From IMG/VR virus record IMGVR_UViG_3300025141_000020, positions 1 through 64,000 of that record: a stretch of DNA of 64,000 nt. The stretch is one strand, 5' to 3'. The position numbers and the translations under genes were made by a program. Positions 12,007-63,995 of the stretch are shown here, one piece after another. Positions within the stretch are counted from its first letter, which is position 1. Every line of letters starts with the position of its first letter. Below the pieces are notes generated by a model, which was not told the origin of the DNA, did no database searches, and was given only the letters and a program-made list of their open reading frames with translations.

Positions 12007-12067
12007 AAAAAAGTCGTTTACAATAAATACAATCATAAACGACTTACTACATAAAGTAGTTATTTAT

Positions 12068-23562: not shown

Positions 23563-24126
23563 CTATTGTTCTTCTGATTTTTCTTCGTCAGCGAATCTCT
23601 TAGTTGACTTTCTATTAGCTAAAACATTTGCCCATTTAGTTGTGAAAATTTTATAGTAAGCTTTTAAACTATTTAACATTTCTACAAGTTCGTCATCTAA
23701 TTTCATCATCTTGCCACTTAGATAAACACCATTTTCTTCTCCAACAGCATAAAAGAAGTCCACATCAAACTTAACCAATTTACCGGACCACTCTACAGTA
23801 TTGTCGTATATATTTAATCTGTTAAAATCTACTAGGTCAGATACTTGGTCTATAAAATCGTCCATTGTCTCTTGGTAGTTTCCTTGTTCTTCACTAGTTA
23901 GTTCTAAATCTTGTTTGTCGTAAGCGTGAACCACAACTTTACCGTTTGAAACGCTATATTCTTTTGTCTGTTCTTTGTCTCTTTCTAGAGGTTCTATCTC
24001 AGTTTCTGTCTCTACCTCTACTTGTTCAAATAAGCTTCTAGATAGGTCTAAAAGTGATTTCATTTCATCATACCTAACATTATTGTACTCATTAGTGTCT
24101 TTTGTTTTCATTGTTCTTTTTTTCAT
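23563..24126 (-). CDS. Hypothetical protein
   Basis: 187-aa ORF in the late operon. Confidence 0.7.
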   Translation of the reverse strand: MKKRTMKTKDTNEYNNVRYDEMKSLLDLSRSLFEQVEVETETEIEPLERDKEQTKEYSVSNGKVVVHAYDKQDLELTSEEQGNYQETMDDFIDQVSDLVDFNRLNIYDNTVEWSGKLVKFDVDFFYAVGEENGVYLSGKMMKLDDELVEMLNSLKAYYKIFTTKWANVLANRKSTKRFADEEKSEEQ

Positions 24127-45300: not shown

Positions 45301-45308
45301 TTTCTATA

Positions 45309-48300: not shown

Positions 48301-49472
48301 TCATTAAATTGATTTAATGTGGAACGTTTAATCCATTGTGATATATTAGAATATATCCTATTTACAGTTTTCGTTGACCCATTTTTATCCACTACATTAT
48401 AAGTTTCTTTACTACCTATTTGCTGTTTTTTTAATTTTTCTATAAAAGCTATTTGTTGTTGGGTGTTTGTAAATTTTAATGATATACATTTATTAACTGA
48501 TGAAAATATTTTATTATTTCTTATTTCACTTGTCCAATCAAGTGGGCTTATTTCTTTTCCGTTAAGTACAAGTGTTGGGGTTTCTGTTATTATCCCTTCA
48601 TTGACTTCTCTACTAACATTATATGGTATCTGAATCTTGTTAGTCGTACCCAAATTGAATTCACTTAAATTTGCGTTAACGTTAAATTCATTTTCAATAG
48701 CGTATACCTGACTTGACATTAATTCTATAGCGTCTGCTGGTATATTTTGTTTAGTTAGTTGTTTTTTATAGTCGTAGATTACCTCGCCAGTACCCATATT
48801 ACCATTATCTAGAGTTAGGTATGCTGTATTTAATTTCACCTTTTTTCTGGGCACTGTAACTTGTTTTGGTACACTTATATTTGGTGTAAACCCTTCTAAT
48901 ATAATATTGTCTGTAACATCACAATTAAAACTTAGTGATGTGGTATATTGGCCACAATTCTCACTTAGTATGTCCATGTCAAAAGAAAGTCTTGCTAGAT
49001 TGTTTTTACTTATATTAGGTAGTATCATTTGGATTGGGTGTACCCTTCTTGTCTTACTGCCTGTTGGCAATTTTAATGCCCCTATAACTATACCTGTACG
49101 AGTATTCTGTGTATTATAATAATTTATATGAGATAAAAATGCCCCATATTCTTTACCTCGTACGGAATTAAAAGAATATTTCCCATTATCCCCTTTAAAA
49201 ACTTCTAGAATAATATCAGAGTTATTAATACCTATATTGTCTAAATATTTTTTTAATTTTACCTGTTTACTGCTAAATCTTAAAAATAATCTTTTAAGGT
49301 TACTGTCTGTTTTAACAAAAATCTGAGCTGGTGATTGTGTGTTATATGTAAAACTAAAGCATTTTCTTTTTTTGTAGTTTTTATCCTTGATTCTTCCTGA
49401 AACATAGAATACGAATTTTAACTCATTACTGAGTACCCTAAAATCAACACTACTGTTATAAACTTTTGACAT
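45309..49472 (-). CDS. Large structural protein with C-terminal Cys-rich repeats
   Basis: 1387 aa; CIEDPRGRFETLDRCEEEC / CIETNQGRYSSLEDCKKVC / CFEDRNGRYESIEKCKANC. Confidence 0.65.
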   Translation of the reverse strand: MSKVYNSSVDFRVLSNELKFVFYVSGRIKDKNYKKRKCFSFTYNTQSPAQIFVKTDSNLKRLFLRFSSKQVKLKKYLDNIGINNSDIILEVFKGDNGKYSFNSVRGKEYGAFLSHINYYNTQNTRTGIVIGALKLPTGSKTRRVHPIQMILPNISKNNLARLSFDMDILSENCGQYTTSLSFNCDVTDNIILEGFTPNISVPKQVTVPRKKVKLNTAYLTLDNGNMGTGEVIYDYKKQLTKQNIPADAIELMSSQVYAIENEFNVNANLSEFNLGTTNKIQIPYNVSREVNEGIITETPTLVLNGKEISPLDWTSEIRNNKIFSSVNKCISLKFTNTQQQIAFIEKLKKQQIGSKETYNVVDKNGSTKTVNRIYSNISQWIKRSTLNQFNDVRFTYDSDGLIKEILICPRKKTRIGTIKSGRQNGLYTTGKELLLDGSPYIGYYHIGKASHPYTERSPKSENIKKLTFLYKDTPIQQNSNTDFCFTTYGRYSGIYSAHTSAITNTYDITISGASISADTVVPISDFNLNKPIPLIGDYTESYKPYAFYNVYNDGLIINETTSTDYMTYSAQSSGLYRLTYKGHLNVGYKDTKWCEYLSTVYASAMTGTYPSTNYEIKRLINTSLINAGVGETNIALMDTNFKYYPGERGKNANGILGFSFVVSLVKTSSAGTESTLAEYKVLRTDNDGIANDYLKLQVTDIDKTSSTFTICDMSATSASTIFEHNGTVSVDSGFVNLIKGDKVQLKYTCVSETTSKFGTGGTSTITVNLGHKLDDSGAISEAPFFRAIKSANSVREKQLFFDSTEMSQGFDIVKGNNGRSVKLDGSLYITDNGCNTLTVPTVNMTTFNHLTFVDSKGTNNVLKWDIVRNKPMNAWQSLIENNIIKDYTLKGGTINYMTKMSKNGIFKVCLPQYNQDYDATCLYTFPQQRHSYVVKNIFKDLYGNDLIHYIVITPECGLFKPCSTEKALTSYDILHKTTPDKWKVVNVDKKITIDGKVITIVDPTIIVKPESTSCQYYCKCNQDVANKLKLDPIFGISEIMADTKSDDCIDCIKRANEYCKKLNASCTPVIINHCAESGNLIKEVVSGVTPIKPKGVIPNIDDDDGGTNPGGPPKPQSECDYGECRYTCYIPTDRGRRTSDGNGSSEPVCIEDPRGRFETLDRCEEECQQVNGSSYGSGVGRRRGYDCVQQRLPVNRDNRGKIGIGASPTKSECIETNQGRYSSLEDCKKVCTQRQCGCRCEPGGCDPDGPIKCGEWNNWCGSGWGSGSGNGNGTERWNCFEGLCFEDRNGRYESIEKCKANCQEVITETEDEIRDKSTTQVISDAEKEKQRVDQIENPLTPQTIKDDLIDNPDTETDSDESGICPHGTYFCKAINECISSDDVCPEE

Positions 49473-49476
49473 ATAA

Positions 49477-52400
49477 TTAATAATTAAAACTAGAGCTTTT
49501 TATGTTATAAGATTGTGCTCCTTGGTTGGTGTTATTACCAACAATGTTAGTTGGGGCTATATTATAATTTTCAATCCAAGCTTGTGTATTCGCTCCAAAA
49601 CATTTAAGACCATCTATATTTAAAATATTATCTGTTGCTCCTTGTTTTGTAAATATAGATTGTGATAAGTATTTATCTTTGTTACTATGATATCTGTTAG
49701 CAAGTCTATTGGTTACCTCTCTGACTAATTCGCTCCCTGAAGCTCTGTTCTGATTATTTATATTATATTGATTTGCGTAACTAGATATTGGGTTGTATGT
49801 ACCTCCACTTATTATATTATTAAAGTATAAAGAACCTGATGTTGGTGGTGCTGGTAAACTCATCATCATAGGAGTACTAGCCATTCTTGCTTGTGGGTAA
49901 GAAGTGTAACCACTTAAAGCGGGGCCAGTTATTAATATCTGAGGGATAATAGGCATTGTATTTCCGCTTGGGTTGAAACACCTATAAACAAATTTATCTC
50001 TATGAAATGCTGAATTTTCTACTTTCTCACCACTTGTCCATAGTGTGGTTGCTGGAACCATTTCTTCAACAAGTTTAAGCCAATATGTGCCTAACTCCCT
50101 AACATAACTTAACATTTTAGTGTACGTATATTGATTATTGTTAGCACAAACTTCTTGTAAGTATTGAAGATAAATTTGTTGTAGTACGGGATACCCTCCC
50201 GTTTTACCATCGTTTATTGTCATCCTATCTCTAACATCAATTAAAACTTTCCAGAAATTGTTAAGGAATCTTTTAAAATTCATATTTCTAGTGTCTATAC
50301 TAAGCCCAGCTATTGTTTCATCAAAGACGTATATATAGTTTAATATAAGAAACTGTCCCGATGCTCCACCAGAATCATCTTCAGATACAAATACTTTAAC
50401 ATCCTCTAAAACATTACCATAAGTTTCAAATGTAGACATTACATGTGGACTACCATCAGCGTATAGAGTGTATATAGCTCCACCACCTTCTTTTAATCTA
50501 ATTTCTCCTTTAAAAAATTTATCAACACCAGATGTCCAAACATTACTACCTAAAACATTAGTTCCTTGTTCAGTTGCACTACCTGAATTATTAGCATCAC
50601 TATATACTTTAATATTTCTACCTGTAAAAAAGATGCTTTCTACAAAATGAGTTACGTTGGGGGGTGTGCTGATATCATTTGTGGTTAATGTCCCAGGAGA
50701 GAACCCAATTATAGTCTGTGGAGAAGTGTCGTTAACACAAACTTCAAACCTTAAAAGAGCCCCTTTTGACCTTCTAAAATTCTTATTTGAGGCAAATCCA
50801 CCGTCATGACTCCCTGCTCCACCCGACCTAAATTTACTTCCGGTATAAGGTGTTCCGTCATCTGTTTGTCCTACAACTGTTTGAGAGTAGTTAGCTCCGA
50901 ACCATTTACCAGTATCATCGATAGAGGTTTGGAATGTGCTGTATAGTGTGCCTCCGGTCATACTATTGGTGTTCGCACTAAAGAAACAGCCGTATTCTAC
51001 TGATTGTCTATATACGTCATATACTAATGCTTGTCCTATATTTAGTGATATGTCAACATTTTTTACATTTAATACTAATCTTTCATCTTGGGTTTGATAA
51101 TATGATGCTCTTGTATCGTAAACCCAGTCTCTTGTTTCTAGTTGTGGTTCTTTTCTATTCCATGATTTTTTATCGTCAATCATTCTTGTTAGACCAAACC
51201 CAAAATACATATGTGGGAACCTTCTAAACCTATCTAAATAAGGTGCTTTAATTCTATTAGAATATTCTCCTCCTGTCCAAAAGCCACCCCAAGTGAAGTT
51301 TTCAAATTTATTTACTATTGTTGGTGTACAACCCGTTAGTATCGATTTATCTCTATTAACTATTATATCCGATTTATGTTCTTCTGTTCTTTGGAACCAT
51401 CCGGCCCCTCTTTGGAAGAAATAGTTATTTGTAACTCTTGGTCTTACTGGAAACCCTTCGTTGTCTATAGGGTAATCGCTTCTTTGGAAGTTGTGGGATG
51501 TGGCTCCTGTTTCATAATACCATTGGCTTAATGGCACACTGTAGTTTATTGTGGATGAGGTATACGTTCCTCCGGATAATGTGCTCCAACTTCTGGTAAA
51601 TTTATTTTGTGCCTGTTCGTAGTGGTAGGTCCCACCTGTTGTCATTGCATTAAGACTATTATCGTCCCACACAAAACTTAATGGGGTGTTCATATTAATT
51701 TTAGTGTCCGCTAAAACTACATATTCGTTAAATTCAATTAAGGCCTCTGGTGCACCCACTAATGTTAGTAAAAACTCTATTGCTTTCCTTGTACCTTTAG
51801 ATTTAAATAGATACCCCGTATTTAGTAATATTCTTCTATATAGTTCTATATCTAGTTCAGCTGGAGTCATACCAACACTACTACCAGAATAGGTTGGTTT
51901 GCTAACCCCTAATACGCTGTCTAAGAACCCTACTTTATCTAATGTACTTGGTGTTGACCATCCTAACGTTCTGGCAAAATTCTTAATTAACCCATTAGGT
52001 ATATTATTTTTACCATCGTAGGTTACATTGGTCATATAGGCTATACCATCTACAAAAGTTTTTATGTCGTCAAAACTCCTACCGTATATTTGTAAGGTTT
52101 TTTCTACTTTTTGGTCTGGCGTGTCAAATTCTTTTAGTGTTGGTGATGTTAGAAATCTAGAGACTAGGTTGGTTTTTATATTGTCTAGTTCATCTCCTAT
52201 GTCAGCCAAACCTTTTAGGTAATCAATATACGCAGAACTTACCACATCAAGATTGACATCGTCCCCTAACGGCCACGTTTTATTTATGTAATCATAAAAT
52301 TTGACTCCCTCACTGGTTTCTTTAACTATTTTAAATTTAGCTGTATAGATAGGAATGACATTTCTAGTCATTAGAAAAGCTTCAACACCTTTTAAAGACC

Positions 52401-53241
52401 CTAGTTGTCTTTCACTTTCATCACCATTAGGCTTTAAGTAAAATTTTGTGGTGGTGGATGTCACTGCTGTACCAAAAGGGTCTCCCTCTACTATTATTTC
52501 TATAAAAGATGACCCTATAGTTTGTGCTATAAAGTCAACAACTTTATATTCTTGAGTACCGACATTATTATTAAAAGTTAAAACATAATCTTTATACTCA
52601 TTTGTTATATTTCTTAATTTAGATACCTTACCTTCAGCGATTTTAGTTATTGTATTTGCTGTATTACCTAGATTTTCTAAATTTAATATAACTTCTTCTG
52701 GTGACAAATGTCCGTCTAATAGATTTCCATTTGTTGTAAATTCTATATTAAATGGGTTGGATATGTAATTAACATCACACTTAAAGGTTGTTCTATTTGT
52801 TGTGATGTTATAACTTATATTATACGCTGTAGTATATCCGGTTGTTTCATAGATATCGGTACCATCAAAATATAATGCTGCGGGAAATGTGTTGATGATG
52901 TTATCTACAGCAACATTTAACCTTTTCTTTAGGGAGCCATATAAAACAAAACTACTTAAATCACTAGTGTCGTTATTTATAAAAACCTCTAAATTATTGC
53001 TAGCTGTAGTTCTTGCTATCTCTAGATTAGCTATGCCTAGTGTTGATAATGTTATTGGGTTGGAGAAACTATTTATTTCGTACCCTACTGGCACTGGATT
53101 ACTTATATCTTGCGCAAAAGAGAATGTGCTATTGGTCATTTGTGATGACCCGTCAGTTATTTGGTTTCCGACTAAATTATCACTAAATGTTTCACTGCCG
53201 TTTGGTGGTGCTGGAGGGTATCGGAATCTATTACTTGCCAT
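49477..53241 (-). CDS. Baseplate wedge-like structural protein
   Basis: LYRRILLN..YLFKSKGTRKAIEFLL resembles the P2 gpI-type KGT motif; 1254 aa. Confidence 0.6.
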   Translation of the reverse strand: MASNRFRYPPAPPNGSETFSDNLVGNQITDGSSQMTNSTFSFAQDISNPVPVGYEINSFSNPITLSTLGIANLEIARTTASNNLEVFINNDTSDLSSFVLYGSLKKRLNVAVDNIINTFPAALYFDGTDIYETTGYTTAYNISYNITTNRTTFKCDVNYISNPFNIEFTTNGNLLDGHLSPEEVILNLENLGNTANTITKIAEGKVSKLRNITNEYKDYVLTFNNNVGTQEYKVVDFIAQTIGSSFIEIIVEGDPFGTAVTSTTTKFYLKPNGDESERQLGSLKGVEAFLMTRNVIPIYTAKFKIVKETSEGVKFYDYINKTWPLGDDVNLDVVSSAYIDYLKGLADIGDELDNIKTNLVSRFLTSPTLKEFDTPDQKVEKTLQIYGRSFDDIKTFVDGIAYMTNVTYDGKNNIPNGLIKNFARTLGWSTPSTLDKVGFLDSVLGVSKPTYSGSSVGMTPAELDIELYRRILLNTGYLFKSKGTRKAIEFLLTLVGAPEALIEFNEYVVLADTKINMNTPLSFVWDDNSLNAMTTGGTYHYEQAQNKFTRSWSTLSGGTYTSSTINYSVPLSQWYYETGATSHNFQRSDYPIDNEGFPVRPRVTNNYFFQRGAGWFQRTEEHKSDIIVNRDKSILTGCTPTIVNKFENFTWGGFWTGGEYSNRIKAPYLDRFRRFPHMYFGFGLTRMIDDKKSWNRKEPQLETRDWVYDTRASYYQTQDERLVLNVKNVDISLNIGQALVYDVYRQSVEYGCFFSANTNSMTGGTLYSTFQTSIDDTGKWFGANYSQTVVGQTDDGTPYTGSKFRSGGAGSHDGGFASNKNFRRSKGALLRFEVCVNDTSPQTIIGFSPGTLTTNDISTPPNVTHFVESIFFTGRNIKVYSDANNSGSATEQGTNVLGSNVWTSGVDKFFKGEIRLKEGGGAIYTLYADGSPHVMSTFETYGNVLEDVKVFVSEDDSGGASGQFLILNYIYVFDETIAGLSIDTRNMNFKRFLNNFWKVLIDVRDRMTINDGKTGGYPVLQQIYLQYLQEVCANNNQYTYTKMLSYVRELGTYWLKLVEEMVPATTLWTSGEKVENSAFHRDKFVYRCFNPSGNTMPIIPQILITGPALSGYTSYPQARMASTPMMMSLPAPPTSGSLYFNNIISGGTYNPISSYANQYNINNQNRASGSELVREVTNRLANRYHSNKDKYLSQSIFTKQGATDNILNIDGLKCFGANTQAWIENYNIAPTNIVGNNTNQGAQSYNIKSSSFNY

Positions 53242-53251: not shown

Positions 53252-54172
53252 TTAAACTTTTATATTACTAAAAATCTTACCGAAATCTATATTATTACCT
53301 CTATTTTGCCTAACCTCATATAATTGGTCGTTATATTGGTCTCTAACCTCATATAAGTCGTATTGAGCGTAGATGTTGTTGTTACCAGATAAATCATATA
53401 AAGTGTAAATACCGTCATCGATAGATTTAGTTTGATTACCGTAAGCTGCTATTGCTAATGTTTCAAAGTCGTGGTCTACCATTTCAATATCTAACACCAA
53501 TGGATTAAAAAATGTATTAGTTATTATAACCTTTTGACCTGGTTGTCCAATAAATGGTATAGCGTTTGGATTATTAGAAGGTGCACTAGTTGGTGTTAGT
53601 GTACAAAAAATTAAATTAGTTTGTTTATTAGTATAAACATATCTTGGTGATATTTGATTTGGATTAGATAGGTTTGCTGTTACTGGTTCACAAAAAAAGT
53701 TAGACGTTACTACTCTGAAAAAATTATGTATTTTTTCGTTATTTAGTTGTAGGTATTCTATTCTATATCCAACTAGTCCGTGTGGTTGAAATCTACTTCT
53801 AAATTCTGTTGGTATGTTATTTAAGTCGAATACTAACCCTTTAACGTTTGGTAGTGATGATAGTATCCCACAATCAATAATTTCTGTTCTGATTTCTGCA
53901 GGTCTTATGTAGACAGTGTATATTCCTTTATTTGCAAAAATATTGGATGGGAGACTTAGGTTATATAATCCACCTAACACCTCTATTCCAGCAGATGCTG
54001 GACCCCCAGTGCCCCCTGCATGGTAATATGGGGTAAGTACCGAATTTGCTTGTAATTTAAATAGTGTAGTTGTACTGGTAGCGTCTCTATTAGGTGCTGC
54101 GTGTACAATCACTTCCATATCATCTGGAAGTACATCAGCTGGTCTCTTTATTCCGTATGCTCCTAATGCCAT
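53252..54172 (-). CDS. Putative structural protein (306 aa)
   Basis: Position in the late operon; no recognised domain. Confidence 0.6.
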   Translation of the reverse strand: MALGAYGIKRPADVLPDDMEVIVHAAPNRDATSTTTLFKLQANSVLTPYYHAGGTGGPASAGIEVLGGLYNLSLPSNIFANKGIYTVYIRPAEIRTEIIDCGILSSLPNVKGLVFDLNNIPTEFRSRFQPHGLVGYRIEYLQLNNEKIHNFFRVVTSNFFCEPVTANLSNPNQISPRYVYTNKQTNLIFCTLTPTSAPSNNPNAIPFIGQPGQKVIITNTFFNPLVLDIEMVDHDFETLAIAAYGNQTKSIDDGIYTLYDLSGNNNIYAQYDLYEVRDQYNDQLYEVRQNRGNNIDFGKIFSNIKV

Positions 54173-54175
54173 ATA

Positions 54176-54397
54176 TTAAGGTTGTTTGTCAATTTTATAA
54201 AATCCTCTACCGTGTAATGCTAATTCACCTAGATTCGGTACTTGTCCTAGTCTTTGTGGTCTCTCAAAAACACTAATTCTGCCTCTTTCTATGAATATAT
54301 TCGACCTAACTTCTGGTCTCTCACATACATTCATTAATACCTCTTCTTTTGTTAAGGGTATTATACATCCGGTTACATCAACTTTTTGTAAAGGCAT
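54176..54397 (-). CDS. Small late protein (73 aa)
   Basis: PLTKEEVLMNV.ERPEVRSNIFIERG; own TATTTATA at 54408-54415. Confidence 0.7.
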   Translation of the reverse strand: MPLQKVDVTGCIIPLTKEEVLMNVCERPEVRSNIFIERGRISVFERPQRLGQVPNLGELALHGRGFYKIDKQP

Positions 54398-54455: not shown

Positions 54456-57400
54456 CTATAGTAGTGTTAACGGAGTACCACAACTTTCACAACCCTCTTT
54501 AACACCACATGTAACCCATTGTCCTGTATGGTTATGAAATTGTACGGTTATAGTTCCTAATGTTCCTCCTGCTGCAGTAGTGTCATGTAGAACATTACCA
54601 TAACCATCATTTGCCCAACTAACGTGACCAGGAATAGGACTTCCATTTGGGTAAACCGCTGTAGTTGTAGCCTCCCAAAAACAATCTCCTAGAACACCAT
54701 TTTGAAATGGGTCTGGGTTACCTCCTGGGCCTCCAGCTACACAACATACACAACAGTCACCTGATAAAGTACCTGAGCCGTAATTGTAGAATCCACTTAA
54801 ACCTGGGTATGTAAAACATTCGTTTTCTTGGAAAGCATACTGTATGGTTGGGAAACTCCATTGGCTACCTCCTAAATATGAATGGGTAAGTGGTTGTCCT
54901 GGTGCTAGTAAACCTGCTGACATTAAATCTGGTTCACAGCATCCACAAATTGTGTGTTCACAACAGTTTTGGGTACAACCAGTATAATCACTTATTGGCC
55001 ATGCATCGTCCCACACATTAGATGGACCTCCAGTTGTTCCTGTCCCAGGAAGTATCCAACAATCACATGTTATGGGTCCTGTTGTACAATGACAAGGTCG
55101 AGCTCCACCCCATACCTCAGGACAACAACCTTGAGCACCTCTTGGAGATAATGTTGGGTCCCATATTTGACATGCAGGTCCTAAATTTGGTAATGGGCTC
55201 GGATTAAGGTATAAACCTGAATCGTTATATTTAGTAGCTGTCCCCAAAGGAAGTGTTGCTGCACAAGCAGCCCCGGTAATACTATCGGCATTACACTGAT
55301 TCACACAAGCATTAAAATTAGTGGGACTTACCCATTCACAAGCCAGATTCCTCATAATGGATTGTATTTCTACGAAATCTGTACATGTTGATACGTCGGT
55401 ATTGTATTCGGTCATCAATCCAGCAATAGTATCTCCCCAAGATGGGTACATAGCGAAGCCTAATCCCCAAGTCGTATGACAATGGTATGTACCCCCGTTT
55501 GGGTTTGGTGGATAGCCACTAGATGAGCTTGGTGGTGCGTTAGAATATGTGCTATAAAACAGATGGTCAGAAGAACACATGCCTCCGGTTCCCACTCCTG
55601 TTGGTGGTGGAATCGGGCAAGGAACAGTTTGTCCTGGTGACGATATTCCTACTGTATTGGTGTAAACACTTTGTATTGCAGGCTGGAAAGGTGGGGCAAC
55701 GTTAATATGCCAGTTGATGTAATCCGTGGGAGTACCAACAACACCACTATGGTTAGTATTACTACATTTTGATTGAGCCCACCAATATGGACTACTATTA
55801 CATAAGTAAGACTTACATAAGGCGTCACAGTCTACTTGATTCACAAAAACATCTGGGTCACTATAACTATACATCGCTTGAACACACCCACCAATATTTC
55901 CATCAATACATTTCCACGTTAGTGTTGGTGTACCTCCTGTACCACATGTAAAACATTTCTCATCAAGTCCAGTGGAATTAAGAAAGTGTTCAGTGTCACA
56001 TGGCACCCACCATGGCTTACCGGCACCTTGACCCTGCCAAGTTGTTACGTTAGGGCTAGGTCCCATTGTATAGAGATTTAACCCGTCTGCACTATTACCA
56101 GATAACCAATTACACCAATGTTCTGATGGTGAGTATTGGTCTGGTAACATATTTGCTAAATGTTGTCCTGCATCCCACATCTGAGTTCTAACCCAACAAC
56201 AGCCCGGGTGGAGTGGGTCTTTTACAATTTGTCCTTCTCCCCAATAAGGTTCTGTGCTTGACCACATTTGTACTGTTGTGTGGGGTATTACATTGGTTCC
56301 GTCCCAACCGTCAAATGTGTTTGGTACTGAGTTATCATATATCCCAAGACTACCATTCGATAATACAGTTGGATTCCAATAGCCAAGTAAACCAGCCTGA
56401 TGATGGTACCATGATTTTTGTCCCACACACTGGTCACATTCTCCTGGCTCTATAGGTTCACAATTATTTGTTAATGTCATGCAACTATAGAAACTATCAT
56501 AACAATCACGAGTACAAGTTGCACACCCCCAATCTAATTCACATGGTGTTGGTGCTGATGGAGGTGTACATGGTCCAACATTTATATCTAACCATCCACT
56601 ACATTTACAAGGGTTTAATACTGAATTTGGGTTAGATACTATGTATTGGCTACCCATTGGATTTTGACATATAATACAACATGGTACTGGTGGTCCAGAA
56701 GATACAGGAGCAGAACCTATAGTTCCTAGATTAATATCTACGGGATTAACATCTGGCCCTAATACTTTTTGATGTACTATTTGCTCTGATACGAATCCTT
56801 CTGTTGTTGGATAGATTGGTACTGGGCCGTCATTACACTTGCCCATACTTACTTGTGTGTCGATTCCATTACAATTACAAGGAGCTGCTCCCTGCACTAT
56901 ATAGTAAATAATACCTGTTCCACGAACCTCTGGTAGATGTTTACAACATATTTTACAATTTCCTGAACTACTCCCACCGTCTGGGCATTCTACCATTGGT
57001 CCCGTGCCATCTAAAGACGTACAATACATTCGGCATGGTAAATTTTGGGGGTTTGGGTAGCTAAGTGTCGTACCTGCTACACAACCACCTTGGCCATCAT
57101 CTTCACAACAACAACAATCCTGTGGACAACTAATCTGACTAATTCCCGCACAAACTGAGTTACATGGTAGTCCTGTTGGGTTGAATTGCGTCGTTTGTGT
57201 ACCGTTAACACAGTTTCCAAATCCATCGTCCTCACAACAACAACATGGAGTTCCTTGGGTGGTGGGTTCACAACAGTATTTACACCATTCCTGACACTTT
57301 TCTAAACTAGAGAAAGGTGTACCACCACCATTATAACTCACTTGTGAACCAGGAGCTCCAGCGTCAGTACCCCAAACATTATCCCCATAAGATGCATTAG

Positions 57401-60400
57401 CTGTTATTTCAGTGTTTATATATGGGTATTCTTCTATACAATTTGTTATCTGATATGGGTATTGTGGGTTATTATCGTCACACCACCATCTTTCTTCATA
57501 CACTACAGGAGGACACTCTGGGTCACATGGAATCCACATTAAATCAGTACCGTACGCTGGTAGTCCTGAAGTATTTAAGGCGTTCATATATAGATTATAA
57601 TAATCAGAAGGTAACATTGTTGTATCATACAGTGCCCAATCCCCTGTACCTAAAACCATCACATAACAACAACCATCTTGAGTCACAACATCACCATTTA
57701 TGTATGTTCCTCCATTAGCTGTTGGTGTTGGTGTCCATGACAAAGGTGTACTATTAAAGCTGGTCAAGGTAATACTATAAGTTAGTAGAACACCAGCACT
57801 ACCCTCGTAATGGTATGTTATGGTATTATCTAAACATTTCTCACACTCACAACATCTTTGATTATTGTTTGTTGCTGCATGACAGCACGCTAAGGTGTAA
57901 CATGGTGGTAATTGTACTGGATTAGTTGGTGCGGCTGTGAACTCACATTGGCACACACCATTACATTCAAATTGACATACCAGTTGGCAGTCAGCTTGTG
58001 CAGTAGGACCTACATATGGCCCAGACATTAAGGTGTTAATTACTGGGTAAACTATACATCCCAGTATATCATCACAATAATAATCTAGGTATATTTCTAC
58101 ACAAGGCTCCTCGGTAATGATACAATCAATTAGTGTTGCATAACAATCTGCTGCCATACAGTTGCAGTTTTGATTCATAGCACAATACCAGTTTAAATAA
58201 CAAGTTCCTGGGGATGAGGTTACTGAGTCACAGTCACAACAAAATCTACAAGCTTCTTGACAAGCTCCTAGTGAAGTAAAATAAGCCATATTGTTTACAG
58301 CTCTAGTTACAGCTCCAACACCAAATAAATTTGTATCTAATAGTGTGCTAATATTACTCACACAACCACCCAAACTAGCACTGTAATCATAGTGACACCA
58401 GTACTCTGTTGGTGGTAATGAACAGTCACAAGGTGTTGTTGTTGTTGTTGCTAAGAAACAACCTAAAGCGTCCCAGAAAAAAGTACCAGCACAGTTAGAT
58501 ACATTTCCGACAAAAGTACATACAGACACACCATTAGGGTCGCAGCACCAAGTACACTCTGGTTGACAGTCCCCTAATGACGTAAAGTTTGTAGTTAGTG
58601 GGTTTTGGTACAGTGCGTCACCATCATTTACTTCTACACACCCAGTACCATCTACATTTACCACCGCATTAGGTGAACAATCAGAACTATCGTCACAATA
58701 CCATTGTGGCGGTAATGGTCCGGGACAACAGTTTGGTAATAACGCATTTACTGGATTTATACCCATACATTCATTGTAGGAATTGTATGCGTAAACATTT
58801 GGTGGACAATCCGTTGGGATTGGACCAGATGCTAGAATTAATTCTTGTTGGTAAGTTGCACACATTGGTATGCAAGGATTTGTTCCTGGTATACAAAAAC
58901 ATTGTGCGTCACACTCATCACCACTACCATTATCACAAGTTGAGTTATTATAACAATTAAAAATATGTCCTGTTCCCATAGTAGTGTCACACGCACTTGG
59001 TACACATCCGTCTGGTGAACATTCCCAACTTGGTGTATAGGCCGGGTCACAAACATCACATGGGTCATAAGTTGCTGCTTGCCATATAAATGGTACTGGT
59101 GGGTCTCCTGGCGTTAGATTACAACTTACCCAACAGTTTGGTACTGAACCAGCTGGTGGGTCTCCTGGTGTAAAATGATTACAATCATATGTTGTTGGGT
59201 CTCCTGGTGTAGGTGGGGTTTGTGGTAATATAATAGGGCAATCACATCTAAAACAACAAAAATCGGTATCAGTATCACCCCAATAAACAGCATCATCTTC
59301 ATCGTAAAACTGGAATAAACTATTCCAGGCTCCAGTTGAATTTACTGGTTCCGGGCCACATGCACAATCACATGTTTCATCTGTTGGGTCACAACATGTT
59401 GGAGTAGTAGCTGGTGCTACTGGTGGGCATAAAGCGTTAGTACAATCAAACATAAAACACCACGGATATGCGGGGTTAAATACATACCCAGATGATGTTG
59501 GGTCATTACATGGGGTAGTTGATATGTTGTAAGCCTGGTCGTATGAACAAGGCCAATCTAATATTGGTGATGGTGGCCCATTTGGGTACCAAATCATATT
59601 GAATCCTGATGTTAAGTCATCATCACAGTCCGCATAACAACATCCTTGATTTGCATAACAACAAGCTGAAAAAGTGTCATATCCGGTCCATAATGGGTCT
59701 GGGTCGGTAACCTGCCAATTATTTTGAGCTATAATTGTTTGACTAATCCCTTGTTTACAACCAATTAAAACCGGTGGTATAGTTGGTGTCGTTGTTGTAC
59801 CTGTTTCTGTAAAGCAGTCCCAACCAAAATCACAAATACAAGCTGCTAGACAAGATGGTTGGTCAGGATAAGATGGGATTCCGTTTAATCCTCCTGTTGG
59901 GTCTGGACCATATGTGTTAGGACTTGTAGATATTAGTGTAGGACACATGTTTGGGTAGGAACTAGTACATGGAGTCATGGCATTACAATCACATGTCCAA
60001 CATTCTATATTTACTGTACAAGCTGTAACACAGTCTGCCTCGGTTAAGTATGGACCAGTACCGGTTGGTGGTCCACCTAATGTATACCATGGTATACATG
60101 GACTCTGGTATGGTCCTGGTGTAGGTGGGTTATATACAATATATGGGTCATCACACCACCAACTACAAGGTACATCTCCAACTACATTTGACACACCAAA
60201 ATATATTAACATATTTGATTCACAGTCACTTTGTGAAGGCCACAAGGTGGCGTTTGGGTCCATTGAACCAATAACTAGTGGTCCTGGTGTCGGTATACCA
60301 CCCAAAGACTGGCATCCACTTTCACAATCCCAAGTCCAGACTGTATCAATACAACATCCTGCTATAGGGCCAATAGGTGCTAGATTAACTGGTGGTATAA

Positions 60401-63107
60401 ATGTGCTTGGTGCATTAGATAGTACACCATTATTACAATCACTTATGAGATAAGGTGGACTTAAATATAAACTATAGTTATAAGCTAAATCAGTAAATGT
60501 GTTATTTATTGCGTTAACACTAATCATTGTGTTAATATATAAGGTAGCATCATAGTCACAACCTAATGTATCACAACAAGGCACTCCCATAGCCGCTGGT
60601 GTTGTACATGAATAAGCTATTGGTTCACAATAATCACTACATAGTGGTTCTGTAGCAAAAGATAGTGGTGTAAAATAAAGAGGGTCGTCAGATAGTATTG
60701 GGTAACATCCTTGACATGTATATTGTTCTGTACATACCCATCTACTATCAAAACACGTACCATCATTTAAGTTAGTATCACAGTCACCCCAAAACATTTC
60801 TCCGGTTACAGTAATTGGATTACCAAATTGGTCAACCGTATCTAAAGTTGCTCCCGATATCATAATACAGTCCAGACTTGTAGAACTTGGTAATGGACAT
60901 GCTTGCCAGTGTGGGGATATGTCTGGTTCACCATAAGTTCCTGCATAGTTCCATTCAGAACAAGGAAAAGATGATGAAATCTGGTCAGTTAAACACACGT
61001 AACATACACCATTATAACTTACCGTATCATTCTCATTATAGCTAGCAAACGTAGAATCCCAAGGTCCCCCAAGCCATCCCCATGGATTAGAATTCATTTG
61101 CATGGCATTGAAGATACCATTTATTCCAATACAATCAACATCACAATCTCCTACTGGCCCTTCTATAGGACAAACCCAACTTACACACCCTATGTAATCC
61201 CATTGGGTTGTAAATTGCATTGTGTATCCTGTTGGTGGGTCTAATGTTCCACTAACTAGGGCTTGGTAACAATTTCCTTCTGTTCCTTCTACGAAGTCTC
61301 CAGCGTTATAAAAGTTACCCTGACTATAAAAGTTAGTTGGTCCTAGTGTAAAGTCGTTACATGGCGTATTTGTTCCTGGTGGACATGCAACACAATCTGG
61401 AGTACAAGCTTCCCATACATGTGTTTTAACACCACCGTCATTATATACCCCTTCTTCCATCATAACAGGGGCTACACCATACCATGGGTCAGATGAAGAT
61501 ATGTTTATTACAGCCATAAAACAACAACAAGAATTATATGTAACATCATAAACTATATCACCTATAGCATAGTTACCACTTGGTGACCAATCACCAATTA
61601 CAGTACCTGGACCTATTGGTATTGAAGTTCCCATAATTCCAGGTATATTACCTCTATCCACATATTCATCTTTTGTTGTACAATATTCACAATCACCTGA
61701 TGGACACGCAATGCATTCTTCTGCTCCCCACGCTAAATTATCTAAACCACAACTCGTAGCCTCAAAAATTGTTATCCCGTTAGTAAAGTCCCAGAAATTT
61801 ATTGGTGTGTCACCATCAGCCCATGTACCACTAGAGTTTGCTGCGGAAGATATGGTGTAAGCTGTAAACACGGTAGTTGCATCTGTAATCACACCATATA
61901 CACCAGTTAAAAATCCGTTAGTTATAGGGTCTAAAACATCACCACCTATAGGTACTACCACACCAACATTAAAACCTGGTGGTAGGTTAGGTGAGTTTAA
62001 GTTTGTATATGTTTGAAAATTACCCAAAATACTATCTGTTATTCCTGACACCGTAAAACATGGTTTACCAGATATAGCTCCAGGGCCAAAAGTCATACCA
62101 CTGTATTGATTTATGTGGGTTGCTGAATCCAGAGGTAAATCTGGGTAGTCATTAAAATAACCTGTAGATGAACCTTGAAAACCACTTGGGTTACCAAATA
62201 TATCATAGGTTGGTGGTCCCGTTAGGGGACTTGATTGGTCCATTTGAAATGGTGGAGTTGCTAATGGACCGGCCATAAATGGATAAGTCTCTAATGGTAG
62301 TGATAATATTTTTTCAGTACTTAGTGGTCCCCATGGTGAATCTTGTGTAATGGTCACCTTATATTTTGCTGGTGTTGTCGGATAAATCTTTATATCTTGT
62401 GTAGTTAAATTTGGAAAATACATGTGTTGCACTGATGTTCCGTCACCCCAGTCGATAGTATATGGTGACTTTTGTAATTGTTCGTAATATCCAAAATCAG
62501 TAGTATTACTTACTAACACACCATAACCACTGTTGGATACACCAGAATAAACAAAGTTAGCGAAAACTTCTTGTTGTGATATATTTCCATCCCAAACAGA
62601 ATAATGTCCAATATCATTAAAATCTTGACTTAAAAAAATTGGTACTTTACTAACATCTGGACCTAGTTGGTCTAGACATTCACAACCAAAAGTGTTTGGT
62701 GTTATGTTAATAGGGTTATTATTACTTTGGCCAACATTTATAACACTCCTTGTTTGATTAAAACTATCACTGTATGTGGTTCCTAATAAGGTAACATGTA
62801 GCCCTTTAAAAAGTATGTATAAAAAACTATCTACACTGGTACAGTGGTTAGGGCTATTATTAGGCCCTGTATTCCACAAAATAACACAAGGGTCACTTGG
62901 GGAACAATGTTTTAGTTCTTCTGGGAATGTATTAAGTATGTCTCCATTAATTGCAGACATAACATCAACTCCAGTAGTATTGTACATAGTAATGCCAGAA
63001 CAATTTGTACTAGTGTTTATAGGCCAAAAATTTGTACCACCACTACAAGGTATTTCCCAATATATATCTGGGTTTATTCTCTTTATTCTAAATTTTTGTA
63101 CTTCCAT
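54456..63107 (-). CDS. Giant Cys/Pro-rich virion protein with PKD-like and CBM5/12-like modules
   Basis: 2883 aa, about 230 Cys (manual count), few K/R; YTIDWGDG PKD-like motif; W-x4-6-Y-x2-GD-x-V repeats; WxC...C...F/Y.S/T..xCxxxC repeats. Confidence 0.8.
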   Translation of the reverse strand: MEVQKFRIKRINPDIYWEIPCSGGTNFWPINTSTNCSGITMYNTTGVDVMSAINGDILNTFPEELKHCSPSDPCVILWNTGPNNSPNHCTSVDSFLYILFKGLHVTLLGTTYSDSFNQTRSVINVGQSNNNPINITPNTFGCECLDQLGPDVSKVPIFLSQDFNDIGHYSVWDGNISQQEVFANFVYSGVSNSGYGVLVSNTTDFGYYEQLQKSPYTIDWGDGTSVQHMYFPNLTTQDIKIYPTTPAKYKVTITQDSPWGPLSTEKILSLPLETYPFMAGPLATPPFQMDQSSPLTGPPTYDIFGNPSGFQGSSTGYFNDYPDLPLDSATHINQYSGMTFGPGAISGKPCFTVSGITDSILGNFQTYTNLNSPNLPPGFNVGVVVPIGGDVLDPITNGFLTGVYGVITDATTVFTAYTISSAANSSGTWADGDTPINFWDFTNGITIFEATSCGLDNLAWGAEECIACPSGDCEYCTTKDEYVDRGNIPGIMGTSIPIGPGTVIGDWSPSGNYAIGDIVYDVTYNSCCCFMAVINISSSDPWYGVAPVMMEEGVYNDGGVKTHVWEACTPDCVACPPGTNTPCNDFTLGPTNFYSQGNFYNAGDFVEGTEGNCYQALVSGTLDPPTGYTMQFTTQWDYIGCVSWVCPIEGPVGDCDVDCIGINGIFNAMQMNSNPWGWLGGPWDSTFASYNENDTVSYNGVCYVCLTDQISSSFPCSEWNYAGTYGEPDISPHWQACPLPSSTSLDCIMISGATLDTVDQFGNPITVTGEMFWGDCDTNLNDGTCFDSRWVCTEQYTCQGCYPILSDDPLYFTPLSFATEPLCSDYCEPIAYSCTTPAAMGVPCCDTLGCDYDATLYINTMISVNAINNTFTDLAYNYSLYLSPPYLISDCNNGVLSNAPSTFIPPVNLAPIGPIAGCCIDTVWTWDCESGCQSLGGIPTPGPLVIGSMDPNATLWPSQSDCESNMLIYFGVSNVVGDVPCSWWCDDPYIVYNPPTPGPYQSPCIPWYTLGGPPTGTGPYLTEADCVTACTVNIECWTCDCNAMTPCTSSYPNMCPTLISTSPNTYGPDPTGGLNGIPSYPDQPSCLAACICDFGWDCFTETGTTTTPTIPPVLIGCKQGISQTIIAQNNWQVTDPDPLWTGYDTFSACCYANQGCCYADCDDDLTSGFNMIWYPNGPPSPILDWPCSYDQAYNISTTPCNDPTSSGYVFNPAYPWCFMFDCTNALCPPVAPATTPTCCDPTDETCDCACGPEPVNSTGAWNSLFQFYDEDDAVYWGDTDTDFCCFRCDCPIILPQTPPTPGDPTTYDCNHFTPGDPPAGSVPNCWVSCNLTPGDPPVPFIWQAATYDPCDVCDPAYTPSWECSPDGCVPSACDTTMGTGHIFNCYNNSTCDNGSGDECDAQCFCIPGTNPCIPMCATYQQELILASGPIPTDCPPNVYAYNSYNECMGINPVNALLPNCCPGPLPPQWYCDDSSDCSPNAVVNVDGTGCVEVNDGDALYQNPLTTNFTSLGDCQPECTWCCDPNGVSVCTFVGNVSNCAGTFFWDALGCFLATTTTTPCDCSLPPTEYWCHYDYSASLGGCVSNISTLLDTNLFGVGAVTRAVNNMAYFTSLGACQEACRFCCDCDSVTSSPGTCYLNWYCAMNQNCNCMAADCYATLIDCIITEEPCVEIYLDYYCDDILGCIVYPVINTLMSGPYVGPTAQADCQLVCQFECNGVCQCEFTAAPTNPVQLPPCYTLACCHAATNNNQRCCECEKCLDNTITYHYEGSAGVLLTYSITLTSFNSTPLSWTPTPTANGGTYINGDVVTQDGCCYVMVLGTGDWALYDTTMLPSDYYNLYMNALNTSGLPAYGTDLMWIPCDPECPPVVYEERWWCDDNNPQYPYQITNCIEEYPYINTEITANASYGDNVWGTDAGAPGSQVSYNGGGTPFSSLEKCQEWCKYCCEPTTQGTPCCCCEDDGFGNCVNGTQTTQFNPTGLPCNSVCAGISQISCPQDCCCCEDDGQGGCVAGTTLSYPNPQNLPCRMYCTSLDGTGPMVECPDGGSSSGNCKICCKHLPEVRGTGIIYYIVQGAAPCNCNGIDTQVSMGKCNDGPVPIYPTTEGFVSEQIVHQKVLGPDVNPVDINLGTIGSAPVSSGPPVPCCIICQNPMGSQYIVSNPNSVLNPCKCSGWLDINVGPCTPPSAPTPCELDWGCATCTRDCYDSFYSCMTLTNNCEPIEPGECDQCVGQKSWYHHQAGLLGYWNPTVLSNGSLGIYDNSVPNTFDGWDGTNVIPHTTVQMWSSTEPYWGEGQIVKDPLHPGCCWVRTQMWDAGQHLANMLPDQYSPSEHWCNWLSGNSADGLNLYTMGPSPNVTTWQGQGAGKPWWVPCDTEHFLNSTGLDEKCFTCGTGGTPTLTWKCIDGNIGGCVQAMYSYSDPDVFVNQVDCDALCKSYLCNSSPYWWAQSKCSNTNHSGVVGTPTDYINWHINVAPPFQPAIQSVYTNTVGISSPGQTVPCPIPPPTGVGTGGMCSSDHLFYSTYSNAPPSSSSGYPPNPNGGTYHCHTTWGLGFAMYPSWGDTIAGLMTEYNTDVSTCTDFVEIQSIMRNLACEWVSPTNFNACVNQCNADSITGAACAATLPLGTATKYNDSGLYLNPSPLPNLGPACQIWDPTLSPRGAQGCCPEVWGGARPCHCTTGPITCDCWILPGTGTTGGPSNVWDDAWPISDYTGCTQNCCEHTICGCCEPDLMSAGLLAPGQPLTHSYLGGSQWSFPTIQYAFQENECFTYPGLSGFYNYGSGTLSGDCCVCCVAGGPGGNPDPFQNGVLGDCFWEATTTAVYPNGSPIPGHVSWANDGYGNVLHDTTAAGGTLGTITVQFHNHTGQWVTCGVKEGCESCGTPLTLL
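56985..57246 (-). repeat. Internal tandem duplication encoding CCCCEDDGxGxCVxGT...NP..LPC...C (2 copies)
   Basis: Seen in both protein and DNA (acaacaacaaca tracts at about 57105 and 57234). Confidence 0.8.
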
Positions 63108-63110
63108 TAA

Positions 63111-63995
63111 TTATATTATATATTCATACCATGTTATAGGTTGTATAGATGTCATACCTTTTTCACCTAGAAAGACAGGGTTAAAAGGAAATCCTAATAA
63201 GTAAGCGTTATTATCAAACACCCTCACCTTATAACTATATTTTGGTGTTGTTAGTTCATTAACACTTATATTGACCTGGTAATAAAACCAGTTTGATGGT
63301 TCCATAGGTCCTACATTCCCACTTGGGTTTGCATTTACAAATCTATTTGATTTACCTGTTTTTGCATTAAAGAACTTGCATGACATGTAAAATGTTTCTA
63401 TCTCAAAAAGGTCTCTATTTTTTAACCAATGTATATAGTAACTCTCATCTTTTCCTGTGTATGGACCTAATTGTACTTCTGGTAACCAAACATCGTACTG
63501 GGTAGGTAGTGCTTGTGATGCTAGTTGGTAGTAAGCTACTGGGTCTTCGTCTTTGTCTATATTTACGGGATACTTACCACAGTTAGTGGTTGGTAGTATG
63601 ATAGTAAACATTAATTTTTGTTTTTCTCTTTCTGGACTGTCGTAGTAGTCGAACTTCCAAAAACTATTTGTAAAGGATTTTTTATTTCTATATAATTCAG
63701 CGTCAGTAAAGTCAGCATTATTAAAATTAACAGCGTTAGCTCCCCAGTTTTGATTAACTTCATCAAAAAATCTAAACTGATAAAATATATTATAATCCCC
63801 TGTGTCGTTACCATAATAATATCTTGTGGTTTCGTAGTCTTGGATTACATTTACGGCATCCTCCAACTCAACTTGTTCATAATCTGTAATAAGTTGTTCT
63901 CTACCAACTTCATCAAATATTTGACCTAGGGGTACGGTGATATTTTTTTCACCTGGGTTTACTCTTATTTGTATTCTATTCACAGACATCTCCAA
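63111..63995 (-). CDS. Putative structural protein (294 aa)
   Basis: Directly upstream of the giant gene; aromatic-rich beta-type composition. Confidence 0.65.
   Translation of the reverse strand: MEMSVNRIQIRVNPGEKNITVPLGQIFDEVGREQLITDYEQVELEDAVNVIQDYETTRYYYGNDTGDYNIFYQFRFFDEVNQNWGANAVNFNNADFTDAELYRNKKSFTNSFWKFDYYDSPEREKQKLMFTIILPTTNCGKYPVNIDKDEDPVAYYQLASQALPTQYDVWLPEVQLGPYTGKDESYYIHWLKNRDLFEIETFYMSCKFFNAKTGKSNRFVNANPSGNVGPMEPSNWFYYQVNISVNELTTPKYSYKVRVFDNNAYLLGFPFNPVFLGEKGMTSIQPITWYEYII

What the first reader, a model, noticed from the sequence alone, without database searches (positions are those of the whole stretch)
54456..63107. 2883-aa, ~8% cysteine, proline-rich virion protein resembling a eukaryotic extracellular adhesin
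Seen: about 230 Cys (manual count) with CC/CCC/CCCC runs, abundant P/T/G/W, very few K/R, no signal peptide, a PKD-like motif and TPGDP repeats (about 59100-59210). At least six CBM5/12-like units occur: WSPSGNYAIGDIV, YSQGNFYNAGDFV, WDSTFASYNENDTV, WNSLFQFYDEDDAV, TYINGDVVTQDG, WSSTEPYWGEGQIV. Phage structural proteins are normally Cys-poor. Inference: a long beaded filament binding chitin or algal polysaccharide particles, where Bacteroidota hosts gather (a particle-ambush strategy).
Basis: partly seen in the sequence, partly recalled or inferred. Interest (0 to 1): 0.8.

Follow-up and report, generated by a model that had tools for sequence, protein, structure and literature searches.

The report
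Giant cysteine-rich phage tail fibre protein
A marine T4-like phage encodes a 310-kDa tail/baseplate protein with 228 strongly conserved cysteines, probably a disulfide-stapled adhesion fibre of a kind not yet described for phages, but its target (host surface or chitin-like particles) is untested.

Summary
ORF 54456..63107 (-) encodes 2883 aa with 228 Cys (7.9%), 9.4% Pro, 1.7% K+R and net charge -229.

It is a real, conserved gene. More than 40 distinct marine viral contigs carry 2400-2990 aa homologues with the same composition. Cys is by far the best-conserved residue, and variable Cys columns appear and disappear in pairs.

The gene sits in a fixed slot of a T4-like baseplate/fibre module (gp25, gp6-like, 1172 aa, 591 aa, 292 aa, GIANT, 73 aa, 306 aa, three proteins over 1100 aa). 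More distant phages carry 870-1250 aa orthologues in that slot. Identity falls from 94% at the N-terminus to 52-61% at the C-terminus in the closest relative, as in receptor-binding fibres.

A PKD-like beta-sandwich is supported by fold. The six CBM5/12-like units are related to each other, but only one comes near the Pfam threshold. The 1400-aa Cys-rich core matches no known family; its only lead is a non-significant Kunitz/BPTI resemblance.

Best reading: a baseplate-anchored, disulfide-stabilised adhesion fibre. Virion presence, disulfides and ligand are untested, and the "particle ambush" idea has no direct support.

The parts
54456..63107 (-). Whole gene: 2883-aa, 310-kDa, pI about 4, 228-Cys protein
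   Evidence: 100% identical protein in JGI, ENA and Logan assemblies
62658..63107 (-). aa 1-150: most conserved N-terminal region, with start motif M-E-x-Q-K-[FY]-R-I also kept in the short orthologues; proposed baseplate anchor (inferred)
61488..62648 (-). aa 154-540: domain block shared with many shorter phage proteins. It includes a PKD/FN3-like beta-sandwich (about aa 185-272, nt 62292-62555) with the WGDG motif
   Evidence: dozens of 200-1200 aa proteins match 154-300 or 154-540; PKD 1wgo, 1l0q, prob 1.0; BFVD PKD-domain protein, E 4e-15; sub-threshold PKD in relatives
61422..61610 (-). CBM5/12-like unit U1 (aa 500-562); W507, Y513, G516 and D517 are invariant in 12 diverse homologues
61152..61346 (-). 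CBM5/12-like unit U2 (aa 588-652)
60864..61082 (-). CBM5/12-like unit U3 (aa 676-748), the only unit with a Pfam CBM_5_12 hit (E 5e-5, 23.6 bits, below the 26.2 cutoff)
59220..59354 (-). CBM5/12-like unit U4 (aa 1252-1296)
57528..57740 (-). CBM5/12-like unit U5 (aa 1790-1860); AF2 pLDDT about 80-88 here
56073..56294 (-). CBM5/12-like unit U6 (aa 2272-2345)
56508..60785 (-). aa 775-2200: Cys-rich core (151 Cys) of small beta-hairpin plus short-helix modules; matches no known family
59088..59222 (-). Three TPGDP repeats (aa 1296-1340), a Pro-rich linker-like stretch
58533..58712 (-). Repeated module copy 1 (aa 1466-1525): W-x-C..C..G..Y..F-[TS]-S-L-x-x-C-Q-x-x-C-x-[FW]-C-C-D-P
58227..58412 (-). 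Repeated module copy 2 (aa 1566-1627)
57261..57494 (-). Repeated module copy 3 (aa 1872-1949)
56973..57260 (-). Twin CCCC-E-D-D-G repeats (aa 1950-2045, 16 Cys)
54459..56510 (-). aa 2200-2883: fastest-evolving C-terminal third; proposed distal ligand-binding end (inferred)
63111..63995 (-). Upstream 292-aa gene, always directly before the giant gene. Its stop is 3 nt before, or overlaps, the giant's ATG, suggesting translational coupling; candidate partner or adaptor
53252..54397 (-). Downstream conserved 73-aa (54176..54397) and 306-aa (53252..54172) genes that bound the variable slot on the 3' side
41887..53241 (-). Three further large (1254, 1387, 1137 aa) fibre-module genes with ordinary to moderate Cys content

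Best explanation
The gene encodes a giant baseplate-attached adhesion or receptor-binding fibre of an uncultured clade of marine T4-like myoviruses.

Proposed layout (inferred): the conserved N-terminal 150 aa dock it to the baseplate periphery, possibly through the tightly coupled 292-aa upstream protein. A PKD-like beta-sandwich and CBM5/12-like aromatic units follow. Next comes a shaft of about 1400 aa made of small beta-hairpin/helix modules, each locked by several disulfides. The fast-evolving C-terminal third contacts the ligand, most likely a glycan on the host envelope.

The extreme composition would make a long exposed filament that resists proteases and unfolding in seawater: about 100 disulfides, almost no Lys or Arg, net charge -229.

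Shown: the composition, the conservation, the paired gain and loss of Cys, the genomic slot and the N-to-C divergence gradient. Inferred: virion location, disulfides rather than metal sites, the beaded-fibre shape and glycan binding.
For: Real, selected gene:
- 32 protein clusters and 38-54 IMG/VR loci carry intact 2400-2990 aa ORFs with 6.4-9.4% Cys and 1-2.8% K+R, down to about 27% identity.
- Only 117 hits were found among 1.84 billion representatives.

Structural cysteines:
- Mean Cys conservation is 0.84, against 0.20-0.48 for every other residue. 165 of 228 Cys are kept in at least 80% of 27 homologues.
- 18 of 53 variable Cys columns have a co-varying partner Cys (r >= 0.9), against 0-6% for W, Y, G, P, D, N and T.
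- CC and CxxxC spacings are enriched; CxxC is not.

Tail module:
- The order gp25 (PF04965), gp6-like wedge, 1172 aa, 591 aa, 292 aa, GIANT, 73 aa, 306 aa, 1254 aa recurs in all loci.
- T4_baseplate, tail sheath, T4 gp13 and gp32 lie upstream on the same contig.

Variable slot:
- In more distant phages the same slot holds 870-1250 aa orthologues with 3.4-6% Cys. The flanking genes stay 60-78% identical.

Receptor-binding-like gradient:
- Identity to the closest relative falls from 0.94 at the N-terminus to 0.52-0.61 at the C-terminus.

Adhesion-type domains:
- PKD/FN3 fold.
- Six mutually related CBM5/12-like units.
- BFVD hits to phage proteins annotated CBM5/12 or ChiC_BD, E 6e-6 to 1e-4.

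Module shape: AF2 shows repeated beta-hairpin plus short helix, with the CxxxC in the helix.

Precedent: the aquatic myophage Pam3 uses disulfides in its fibre-wedge junction (PMC9942802).

Expression hint: near-identical fragments occur in a metatranscriptome.
Against: - No proteomic or imaging evidence places the protein in virions.
- No significant match to any solved tail-fibre fold. The AF2 models are only moderate (pLDDT 66.8 and 59.6), and I could not read coordinates to check S-S geometry.
- Total Cys counts are odd as often as even across homologues, so not every Cys can be in an intrachain pair.
- Tailed phages assemble in a reducing cytoplasm, and no thiol oxidase was found in the roughly 106 kb examined.
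- The CBM5/12 assignment is sub-threshold.
- The metatranscriptome signal could be carried-over DNA.
Confidence: 0.58

Rival explanations
1. One reading: the filament binds chitin or algal polysaccharide particles rather than the host cell, parking virions where hosts gather (particle ambush).
For: Six CBM5/12-like units with conserved aromatic residues. One near-threshold Pfam CBM_5_12 hit. BFVD matches to chitin-binding-annotated phage proteins. The top, non-significant PDB hits for the C-terminal model are the Serratia ChiB chitin-binding domain and CBM73.
Against: CBM5/12-like and PKD modules are common in phage tail proteins whatever the ligand (one search lists many). The gene occupies a slot that behaves like a host-range cassette, with a fast-evolving C-terminus; a fixed polymer such as chitin would not drive that. 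No data on size fractions or binding were obtained. The host is unknown.
Confidence: 0.12
2. The cysteines are mainly metal ligands (Zn or Fe) that hold small domains together inside the reducing cytoplasm, not disulfides.
For: Assembly is cytoplasmic. An invariant C-x2-C-x4-C-x2-C cluster lies at aa 465-476. Odd Cys totals are common. No oxidase was found.
Against: CxxC is not enriched (18 observed, 16.5 expected), whereas CC and CxxxC are. His is scarce (34). Cys are gained and lost in pairs, not fours. The composition rich in P, T, G, N, D, W and Y and poor in K and R is typical of extracellular disulfide-rich proteins (my own knowledge).
Confidence: 0.13
3. It is not an external fibre. It could be a structural or ejected baseplate/tail-lumen protein, or a tail-associated enzyme such as a depolymerase.
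For: Giant proteins in some phages are ejected proteins (my own knowledge). Its function is unproven. A second giant gene (2019 aa) lies in the tail module.
Against: No catalytic domain was detected. PKD and CBM-like modules and an N-to-C divergence gradient are typical of exposed binding proteins. The gene lies after the wedge genes, where T4 has its peripheral fibre proteins. Its composition differs sharply from the ordinary-composition 2019-aa protein.
Confidence: 0.1
4. Artefact: a spurious ORF, a misassembly, or a read-through fusion with the upstream gene.
For: The upstream ORF is in the same frame and separated only by TAA plus one codon.
Against: Intact ORFs occur in dozens of independent assemblies. 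One Logan contig covers the laid 5-kb stretch (56000-61000) with 0 differences, and another carries the whole ORF. In other lineages the junction is a TAATG overlap in a different frame. The composition of the two proteins is unrelated.
Confidence: 0.01

Closest known systems
Peripheral baseplate and fibre proteins of T4-like myoviruses (T4 gp9-gp12 region, long and short tail fibres)
   Same: Genomic position directly after the gp25, gp6-like and wedge genes of a T4-like tail module. Conserved N-terminus and variable C-terminus.
   Different: No detectable sequence or fold similarity. It is 3-10 times larger and has 7.9% Cys. It is built of small Cys-locked modules rather than a recognisable trimeric fibre fold.
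Disulfide-linked tail fibres and wedge of freshwater cyanomyophage Pam3 (PMC9942802)
   Same: An aquatic myophage using disulfides in its baseplate and fibre apparatus; reduction detaches the fibres.
   Different: Pam3 has a handful of inter-subunit disulfides at the junction. Here about 228 Cys are spread along 2400 residues, presumably within domains. The two are not homologous.
CBM5/12 chitin-binding modules (Pfam PF02839) as found in chitinases and many phage tail proteins
   Same: W-x(5)-Y-x2-G-D-x-V-x-Y-x-G-x-x-Y motif. Near-threshold Pfam hit for one unit. BFVD fold matches to CBM5/12-annotated phage proteins.
   Different: Below the Pfam gathering score. Five of six units go undetected by Pfam. 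The units carry extra Cys (CC or CCC after the hairpin). Binding is untested.
PKD / Ig-like domains on phage surfaces (for example Hoc-type decoration, PKD domains of tail proteins)
   Same: Beta-sandwich fold and WGDG motif.
   Different: No Pfam hit in this protein itself. It is part of a larger 154-540 block specific to this phage group.
Kunitz/BPTI small disulfide domains
   Same: Best PDB profile hits of the repeated module. The alignment spans the whole roughly 55-aa domain, including F-T-S-x3-C-x3-C and the N-terminal W-C..G-x-C. The predicted hairpin plus C-terminal helix fits.
   Different: E 0.68 and 2.2, not significant. The fourth Kunitz Cys is missing and an extra CC follows. This is a lead only.
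Eukaryotic extracellular modular adhesins (EGF- or mucin-type matrix proteins)
   Same: Composition and 'beads on a string' logic only.
   Different: No homology found in Pfam, PDB, BFVD or the ESM Atlas. The gene is native to the phage by codon usage.

Membership tests
CBM5/12 (PF02839) | Score at or above the Pfam gathering threshold (26.2 bits) | tested here: not met
   Best unit (aa 675-750) scores 23.6 bits, E 5e-5; whole protein 18 bits; the other five units give no hit.
CBM5/12 (PF02839) | Small antiparallel beta fold with surface-exposed aromatic pair | tested here: inconclusive
   BFVD matches to phage proteins annotated CBM5/12, ChiC_BD or chitin-binding type-3 at E 6e-6 to 1e-4, but the aligned query ranges are not reported. 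PDB matches (ChiB, CBM73) have E about 4. W and Y of the motif are invariant in U1.
CBM5/12 (PF02839) | Binds chitin or crystalline polysaccharide | not testable with these tools
   Needs expressed protein and a binding assay.
PKD domain (PF00801 / PF18911) | Pfam score above threshold | tested here: not met
   No PKD hit for aa 195-290. Sub-threshold hits (16-17 bits) occur in three shorter relatives at the homologous position.
PKD domain (PF00801 / PF18911) | Ig-like beta-sandwich fold with WDxGDG-type motif | tested here: met
   Foldseek prob 1.0 to PKD structures 1wgo and 1l0q and to many FN3 domains, with TM (target) 0.15-0.6 and E about 0.01-0.1. BFVD PKD-domain protein at E 4e-15. IDWGDGT at aa 218.
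Phage tail fibre / receptor-binding protein | Encoded in the tail/baseplate morphogenesis module | tested here: met
Phage tail fibre / receptor-binding protein | Conserved N-terminal attachment part, divergent C-terminal binding part, cassette-like replacement between relatives | tested here: met
   Identity gradient. The slot holds 870-2990 aa orthologues between conserved flanks.
Phage tail fibre / receptor-binding protein | Physically present on the virion and needed for adsorption | not testable with these tools
   No cultured member.
Kunitz/BPTI | Six Cys in the C1-C6, C2-C4, C3-C5 pattern and a significant profile match | tested here: not met
   E 0.68 and 2.2; the C4 position is not Cys; an extra CC is present.
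Zinc-ribbon / zinc-finger type metal domains | Paired CxxC (or CxxH) knuckles as the dominant Cys pattern | tested here: not met
   CxxC 18 observed against 16.5 expected; CC and CxxxC enriched; only one invariant CxxC..CxxC cluster, at aa 465-476.

The most novel reading that the evidence does not exclude
A clade of marine T4-like phages builds a 310-kDa external filament from about 100 disulfide-locked mini-domains, some of them Kunitz-like. This architecture is otherwise typical of eukaryotic secreted proteins. The phage would support it with its own cysteine synthase, two peptidyl-prolyl isomerases and DnaJ. The fibre would become fully cross-linked only after lysis in oxic seawater. That would amount to an extracellular oxidative maturation step for a tailed-phage virion, and it would link a known sulfur auxiliary gene (cysK) to virion construction.
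Probability: 0.2. Interest if true: 0.85.

Novelty: new variant of a known kind. Interest (0 to 1): 0.64.

Why it matters
Tailed-phage virion proteins are assembled in a reducing cytoplasm and are normally poor in cysteine. A conserved fibre-module protein with about 228 structural cysteines therefore raises a concrete question: how, where and when are about 100 disulfides (or an alternative metal scaffold) formed?

It would also be a new design for host-recognition fibres, made of small cross-linked beads rather than trimeric beta-helices. Such a fibre could be very stable in seawater.

The family is widespread in marine viromes and lacks any Pfam or PHROG model, so defining it would annotate a recurrent 8-9 kb 'dark' gene. 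The possible link to phage-encoded cysK, PPIases and DnaJ would give a structural rationale for auxiliary genes that are usually read as metabolic.

Tried and rejected
- **Family and structure searches.** PHROGs, tblastn against 50,697 phage records, PDB sequence searches with the protein and with profiles of the three upstream proteins, and three ESM Atlas segments gave nothing usable.
- **MAG titles for host hints.** The genome-contig scan returned only a 45-aa PKD-like match in a Flavobacteriaceae MAG.
- **Read-through fusion with the upstream ORF.** Rejected. The stop is TAA, the two compositions are unrelated, and other lineages have a TAATG overlap in another frame.
- **Horizontal acquisition as the cause of higher GC.** Rejected. 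GC3 equals that of the neighbours.
- **Even-number test for fully paired Cys.** No bias (20 even, 22 odd at 90% clustering). "All Cys in intrachain disulfides" is therefore not supported; some may be free, interchain or metal-bound.
- **Promoter and terminator scan.** No better than shuffles.
- **Thiol oxidase, Dsb or thioredoxin-fold gene.** None found in the window ORFs scanned or in about 42 kb more of the contig. About 104 kb of the contig remains unread.
- **cysK as a marker specific to the giant gene.** Rejected. cysK also occurs on a contig carrying only a short relative of the 155-486 block, about 45 kb from cysK, the same spacing as between cysK and the giant gene in the window.
- **More copies of the repeated module.** The HMM gives three significant copies per protein. 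Five or more further sites share only the Cys pattern.
Full report
**1. The observation**

The window is positions 1-64000 of a 210,568-bp marine viral contig, JGI 3300025141 Ga0209756_1000007, also filed as IMGVR_UViG_3300025141_000020. ORF 54456..63107 (-) is 2883 aa.

- Composition: 228 Cys (7.9%), 271 Pro, 281 Thr, 274 Gly, 81 Trp, and only 31 Lys and 17 Arg.
- Physical properties: net charge -229, pI about 4.05, 310 kDa, no hydrophobic segment.
- Other ORFs in the window have 0-5.4% Cys and mostly 7-19% K+R, so the composition is far outside the genome's own range.
- GC3 (0.23) equals that of the neighbours. The gene is therefore native, and its higher GC reflects its amino-acid content.

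**2. A real, selected family**

A search of 5.8 billion clusters gave 32 clusters, nearly all of 2400-2990 aa. All have 6.4-9.4% Cys and 1-2.8% K+R, even at about 27% identity. IMG/VR holds 38-54 loci with intact ORFs of the same kind. A full HMMER scan of 1.84 billion representatives found only 117 hits, about 15 of them giants.

- Cys is by far the best-conserved residue: mean 0.84 against 0.20-0.48 for the others. 165 of 228 Cys are kept in at least 80% of 27 homologues.
- Where Cys columns vary, they vary in pairs. 18 of 53 have a partner Cys column with r >= 0.9, against 0-6% for seven control residue types.
- CC and CxxxC spacings are enriched; CxxC is not.
- Together these points favour disulfides over zinc sites. 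However, total Cys counts are odd as often as even, so some Cys must be free, interchain or metal-bound.

**3. Genomic context**

In every locus the order is class II RNR, gp25 (PF04965), gp6-like wedge protein, about 1172 aa, about 591 aa, about 292 aa, GIANT, (211 aa), 73 aa, 306 aa, then three proteins over 1100 aa. Walking up the contig adds gp32, DnaB, a T4_baseplate protein, the tail sheath and T4 gp13. The window itself carries a primase, RuvC and SbcCD-like genes. This is therefore a distant T4-like myovirus.

The closest cultured relatives, through gp6 at only 28% identity, are Flavobacterium phage immuto, Microcystis phage Mel-JY01 and a 484-kb metagenomic phage. Immuto and Mel-JY01 have a similar module but no giant gene.

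In more distant uncultured relatives the same slot holds 870-1250 aa orthologues. These share the start motif and the aa 154-540 block, and have 3.4-6% Cys. The flanking genes stay 60-78% identical. The giant is thus an expanded version of a slot protein that behaves like a host-range cassette. Identity to the closest homologue falls from 0.94 at the N-terminus to 0.52-0.61 at the C-terminus.

The upstream 292-aa gene ends 3 nt before the ATG or overlaps it. That indicates translational coupling, not read-through.

**4. Anatomy**

The AF2 models were of moderate quality: aa 1-1200 at pLDDT 66.8 and aa 1684-2883 at 59.6.

- *PKD-like domain.* Foldseek against the PDB finds only a PKD/FN3 beta-sandwich. 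Against BFVD it finds a PKD-domain phage protein (E 4e-15), then phage proteins annotated CBM5/12, ChiC_BD or chitin-binding (E 6e-6 to 1e-4).
- *CBM5/12-like units.* Pfam detects only one unit, below threshold. Profile-profile comparison links all six units at 86-96% probability along a chain.
- *Cys-rich core.* It is made of repeated beta-hairpin plus short-helix modules with the CxxxC in the helix.
- *Repeated module.* One module type occurs three times per protein with high significance. Its best PDB profile hits are Kunitz/BPTI domains, but the hits are not significant and one Cys is missing.
- *Other searches.* The core and the C-terminal third match nothing else.

**5. Interpretation**

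The best-supported reading is a baseplate-anchored, disulfide-stabilised adhesion or receptor-binding fibre.

- The near absence of Lys and Arg, together with dense cross-linking, would give protease and denaturation resistance in seawater. This is inference.
- The chitin or particle-ambush idea rests only on the CBM-like motifs, and such motifs are common in phage tail proteins.
- How the cysteines are oxidised is open. No oxidase was seen in about 106 kb of the contig.
- Pam3 shows that aquatic myophages can use disulfides in their fibre apparatus (PMC9942802).
- The literature searches found no description of such a protein family.

**6. Side observation**

The phage carries several genes that might support such a protein:
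- a cysK/M-like cysteine synthase with an adjacent cyclophilin-type PPIase;
- a full DnaJ;
- an FKBP-type PPIase.

The cysK-cyclophilin pair is adjacent in 32 of 80 cysK loci. cysK lies on the same contig as the giant gene in four lineages. It also occurs with a short orthologue, so the link is suggestive only. Viral cysK is already known as an auxiliary gene (bioRxiv 10.1101/2021.01.05.425418).

**7. Verdict**

This is a new variant of a known kind, a tail fibre or adhesin with an unprecedented Cys-locked modular build. Interest is 0.64.

Noticed in passing
window 12068..13395 (-): A cysteine synthase (CysK/M-like, 296 bits, below the NCBIfam cutoff of 344) lies directly next to a cyclophilin-type peptidyl-prolyl isomerase. 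The pair is adjacent in 32 of 80 related viral cysK loci. cysK is on the same contig as the giant gene in four lineages, but also on a contig with only a short orthologue.
   Followed up: partly
window 16174..17199 (-); contig about 76.7-77.2 kb (L180:4489-4923): The phage encodes a full-length DnaJ with the CXXCXGXG zinc-finger domain and, outside the window, an FKBP-type PPIase. Together with the cyclophilin this is an unusual set of folding helpers for a phage with a 271-Pro, 228-Cys protein.
   Followed up: partly
window 6159..7202 (-): GlnII-type glutamine synthetase (448 bits against NF041605, cutoff 500), a nitrogen auxiliary gene.
   Followed up: no
window 14683..15858 (-): A homologue of the Druantia defence protein DruA (PF14236, E 3e-24) is encoded by the phage itself.
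   Followed up: no
window 26029..26829 (-): Phage-encoded sigma-70 family factor with regions 1.2, 2 and 4.
   Followed up: no
window 38672..39451 (-): A 259-aa protein with 5% Cys and dockerin/EF-hand-like calcium-binding repeats (PF00404, E 1e-9) lies in the fibre module.
   Followed up: no
window 45309..49472 (-); contig 65.8-69.3 kb (L005:3839-7354): Two other tail-module proteins carry local Cys-rich stretches. The 1387-aa protein has 46 Cys. The 1172-aa wedge-region protein has an insert with many invariant Cys (about aa 548-760 and beyond). Cys-locked inserts are therefore not limited to the giant protein.
   Followed up: partly
window 63105..63113 and the same junction in L004-L036: The upstream gene's conserved C-terminus (F-Y-E-Y-V-N-P) is followed by TAA, one codon, then the ATG of the giant gene, in frame, in most lineages. 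Others have a TAATG overlap. This is probably translational coupling.
   Followed up: yes
contig about 80.1-86.2 kb (L181:3886-9945): A second very large gene (2019 aa) sits in the tail module with ordinary composition (0.6% Cys, 8.9% K+R). It may be a tape-measure or hub protein.
   Followed up: partly
window 22305..23243 (-): A 312-aa protein with 5.4% Cys and a peptidoglycan-binding domain (PG_binding_1). An amidase_2 protein (24123..24716) lies nearby, with a phage lysozyme further off at 11443..12036.
   Followed up: no
window 56165..58855: A marine metatranscriptome run (X13) holds five contigs of 181-274 nt that are at least 99% identical to the gene. This is compatible with in-situ transcription, but DNA carry-over is not excluded.
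   Followed up: partly
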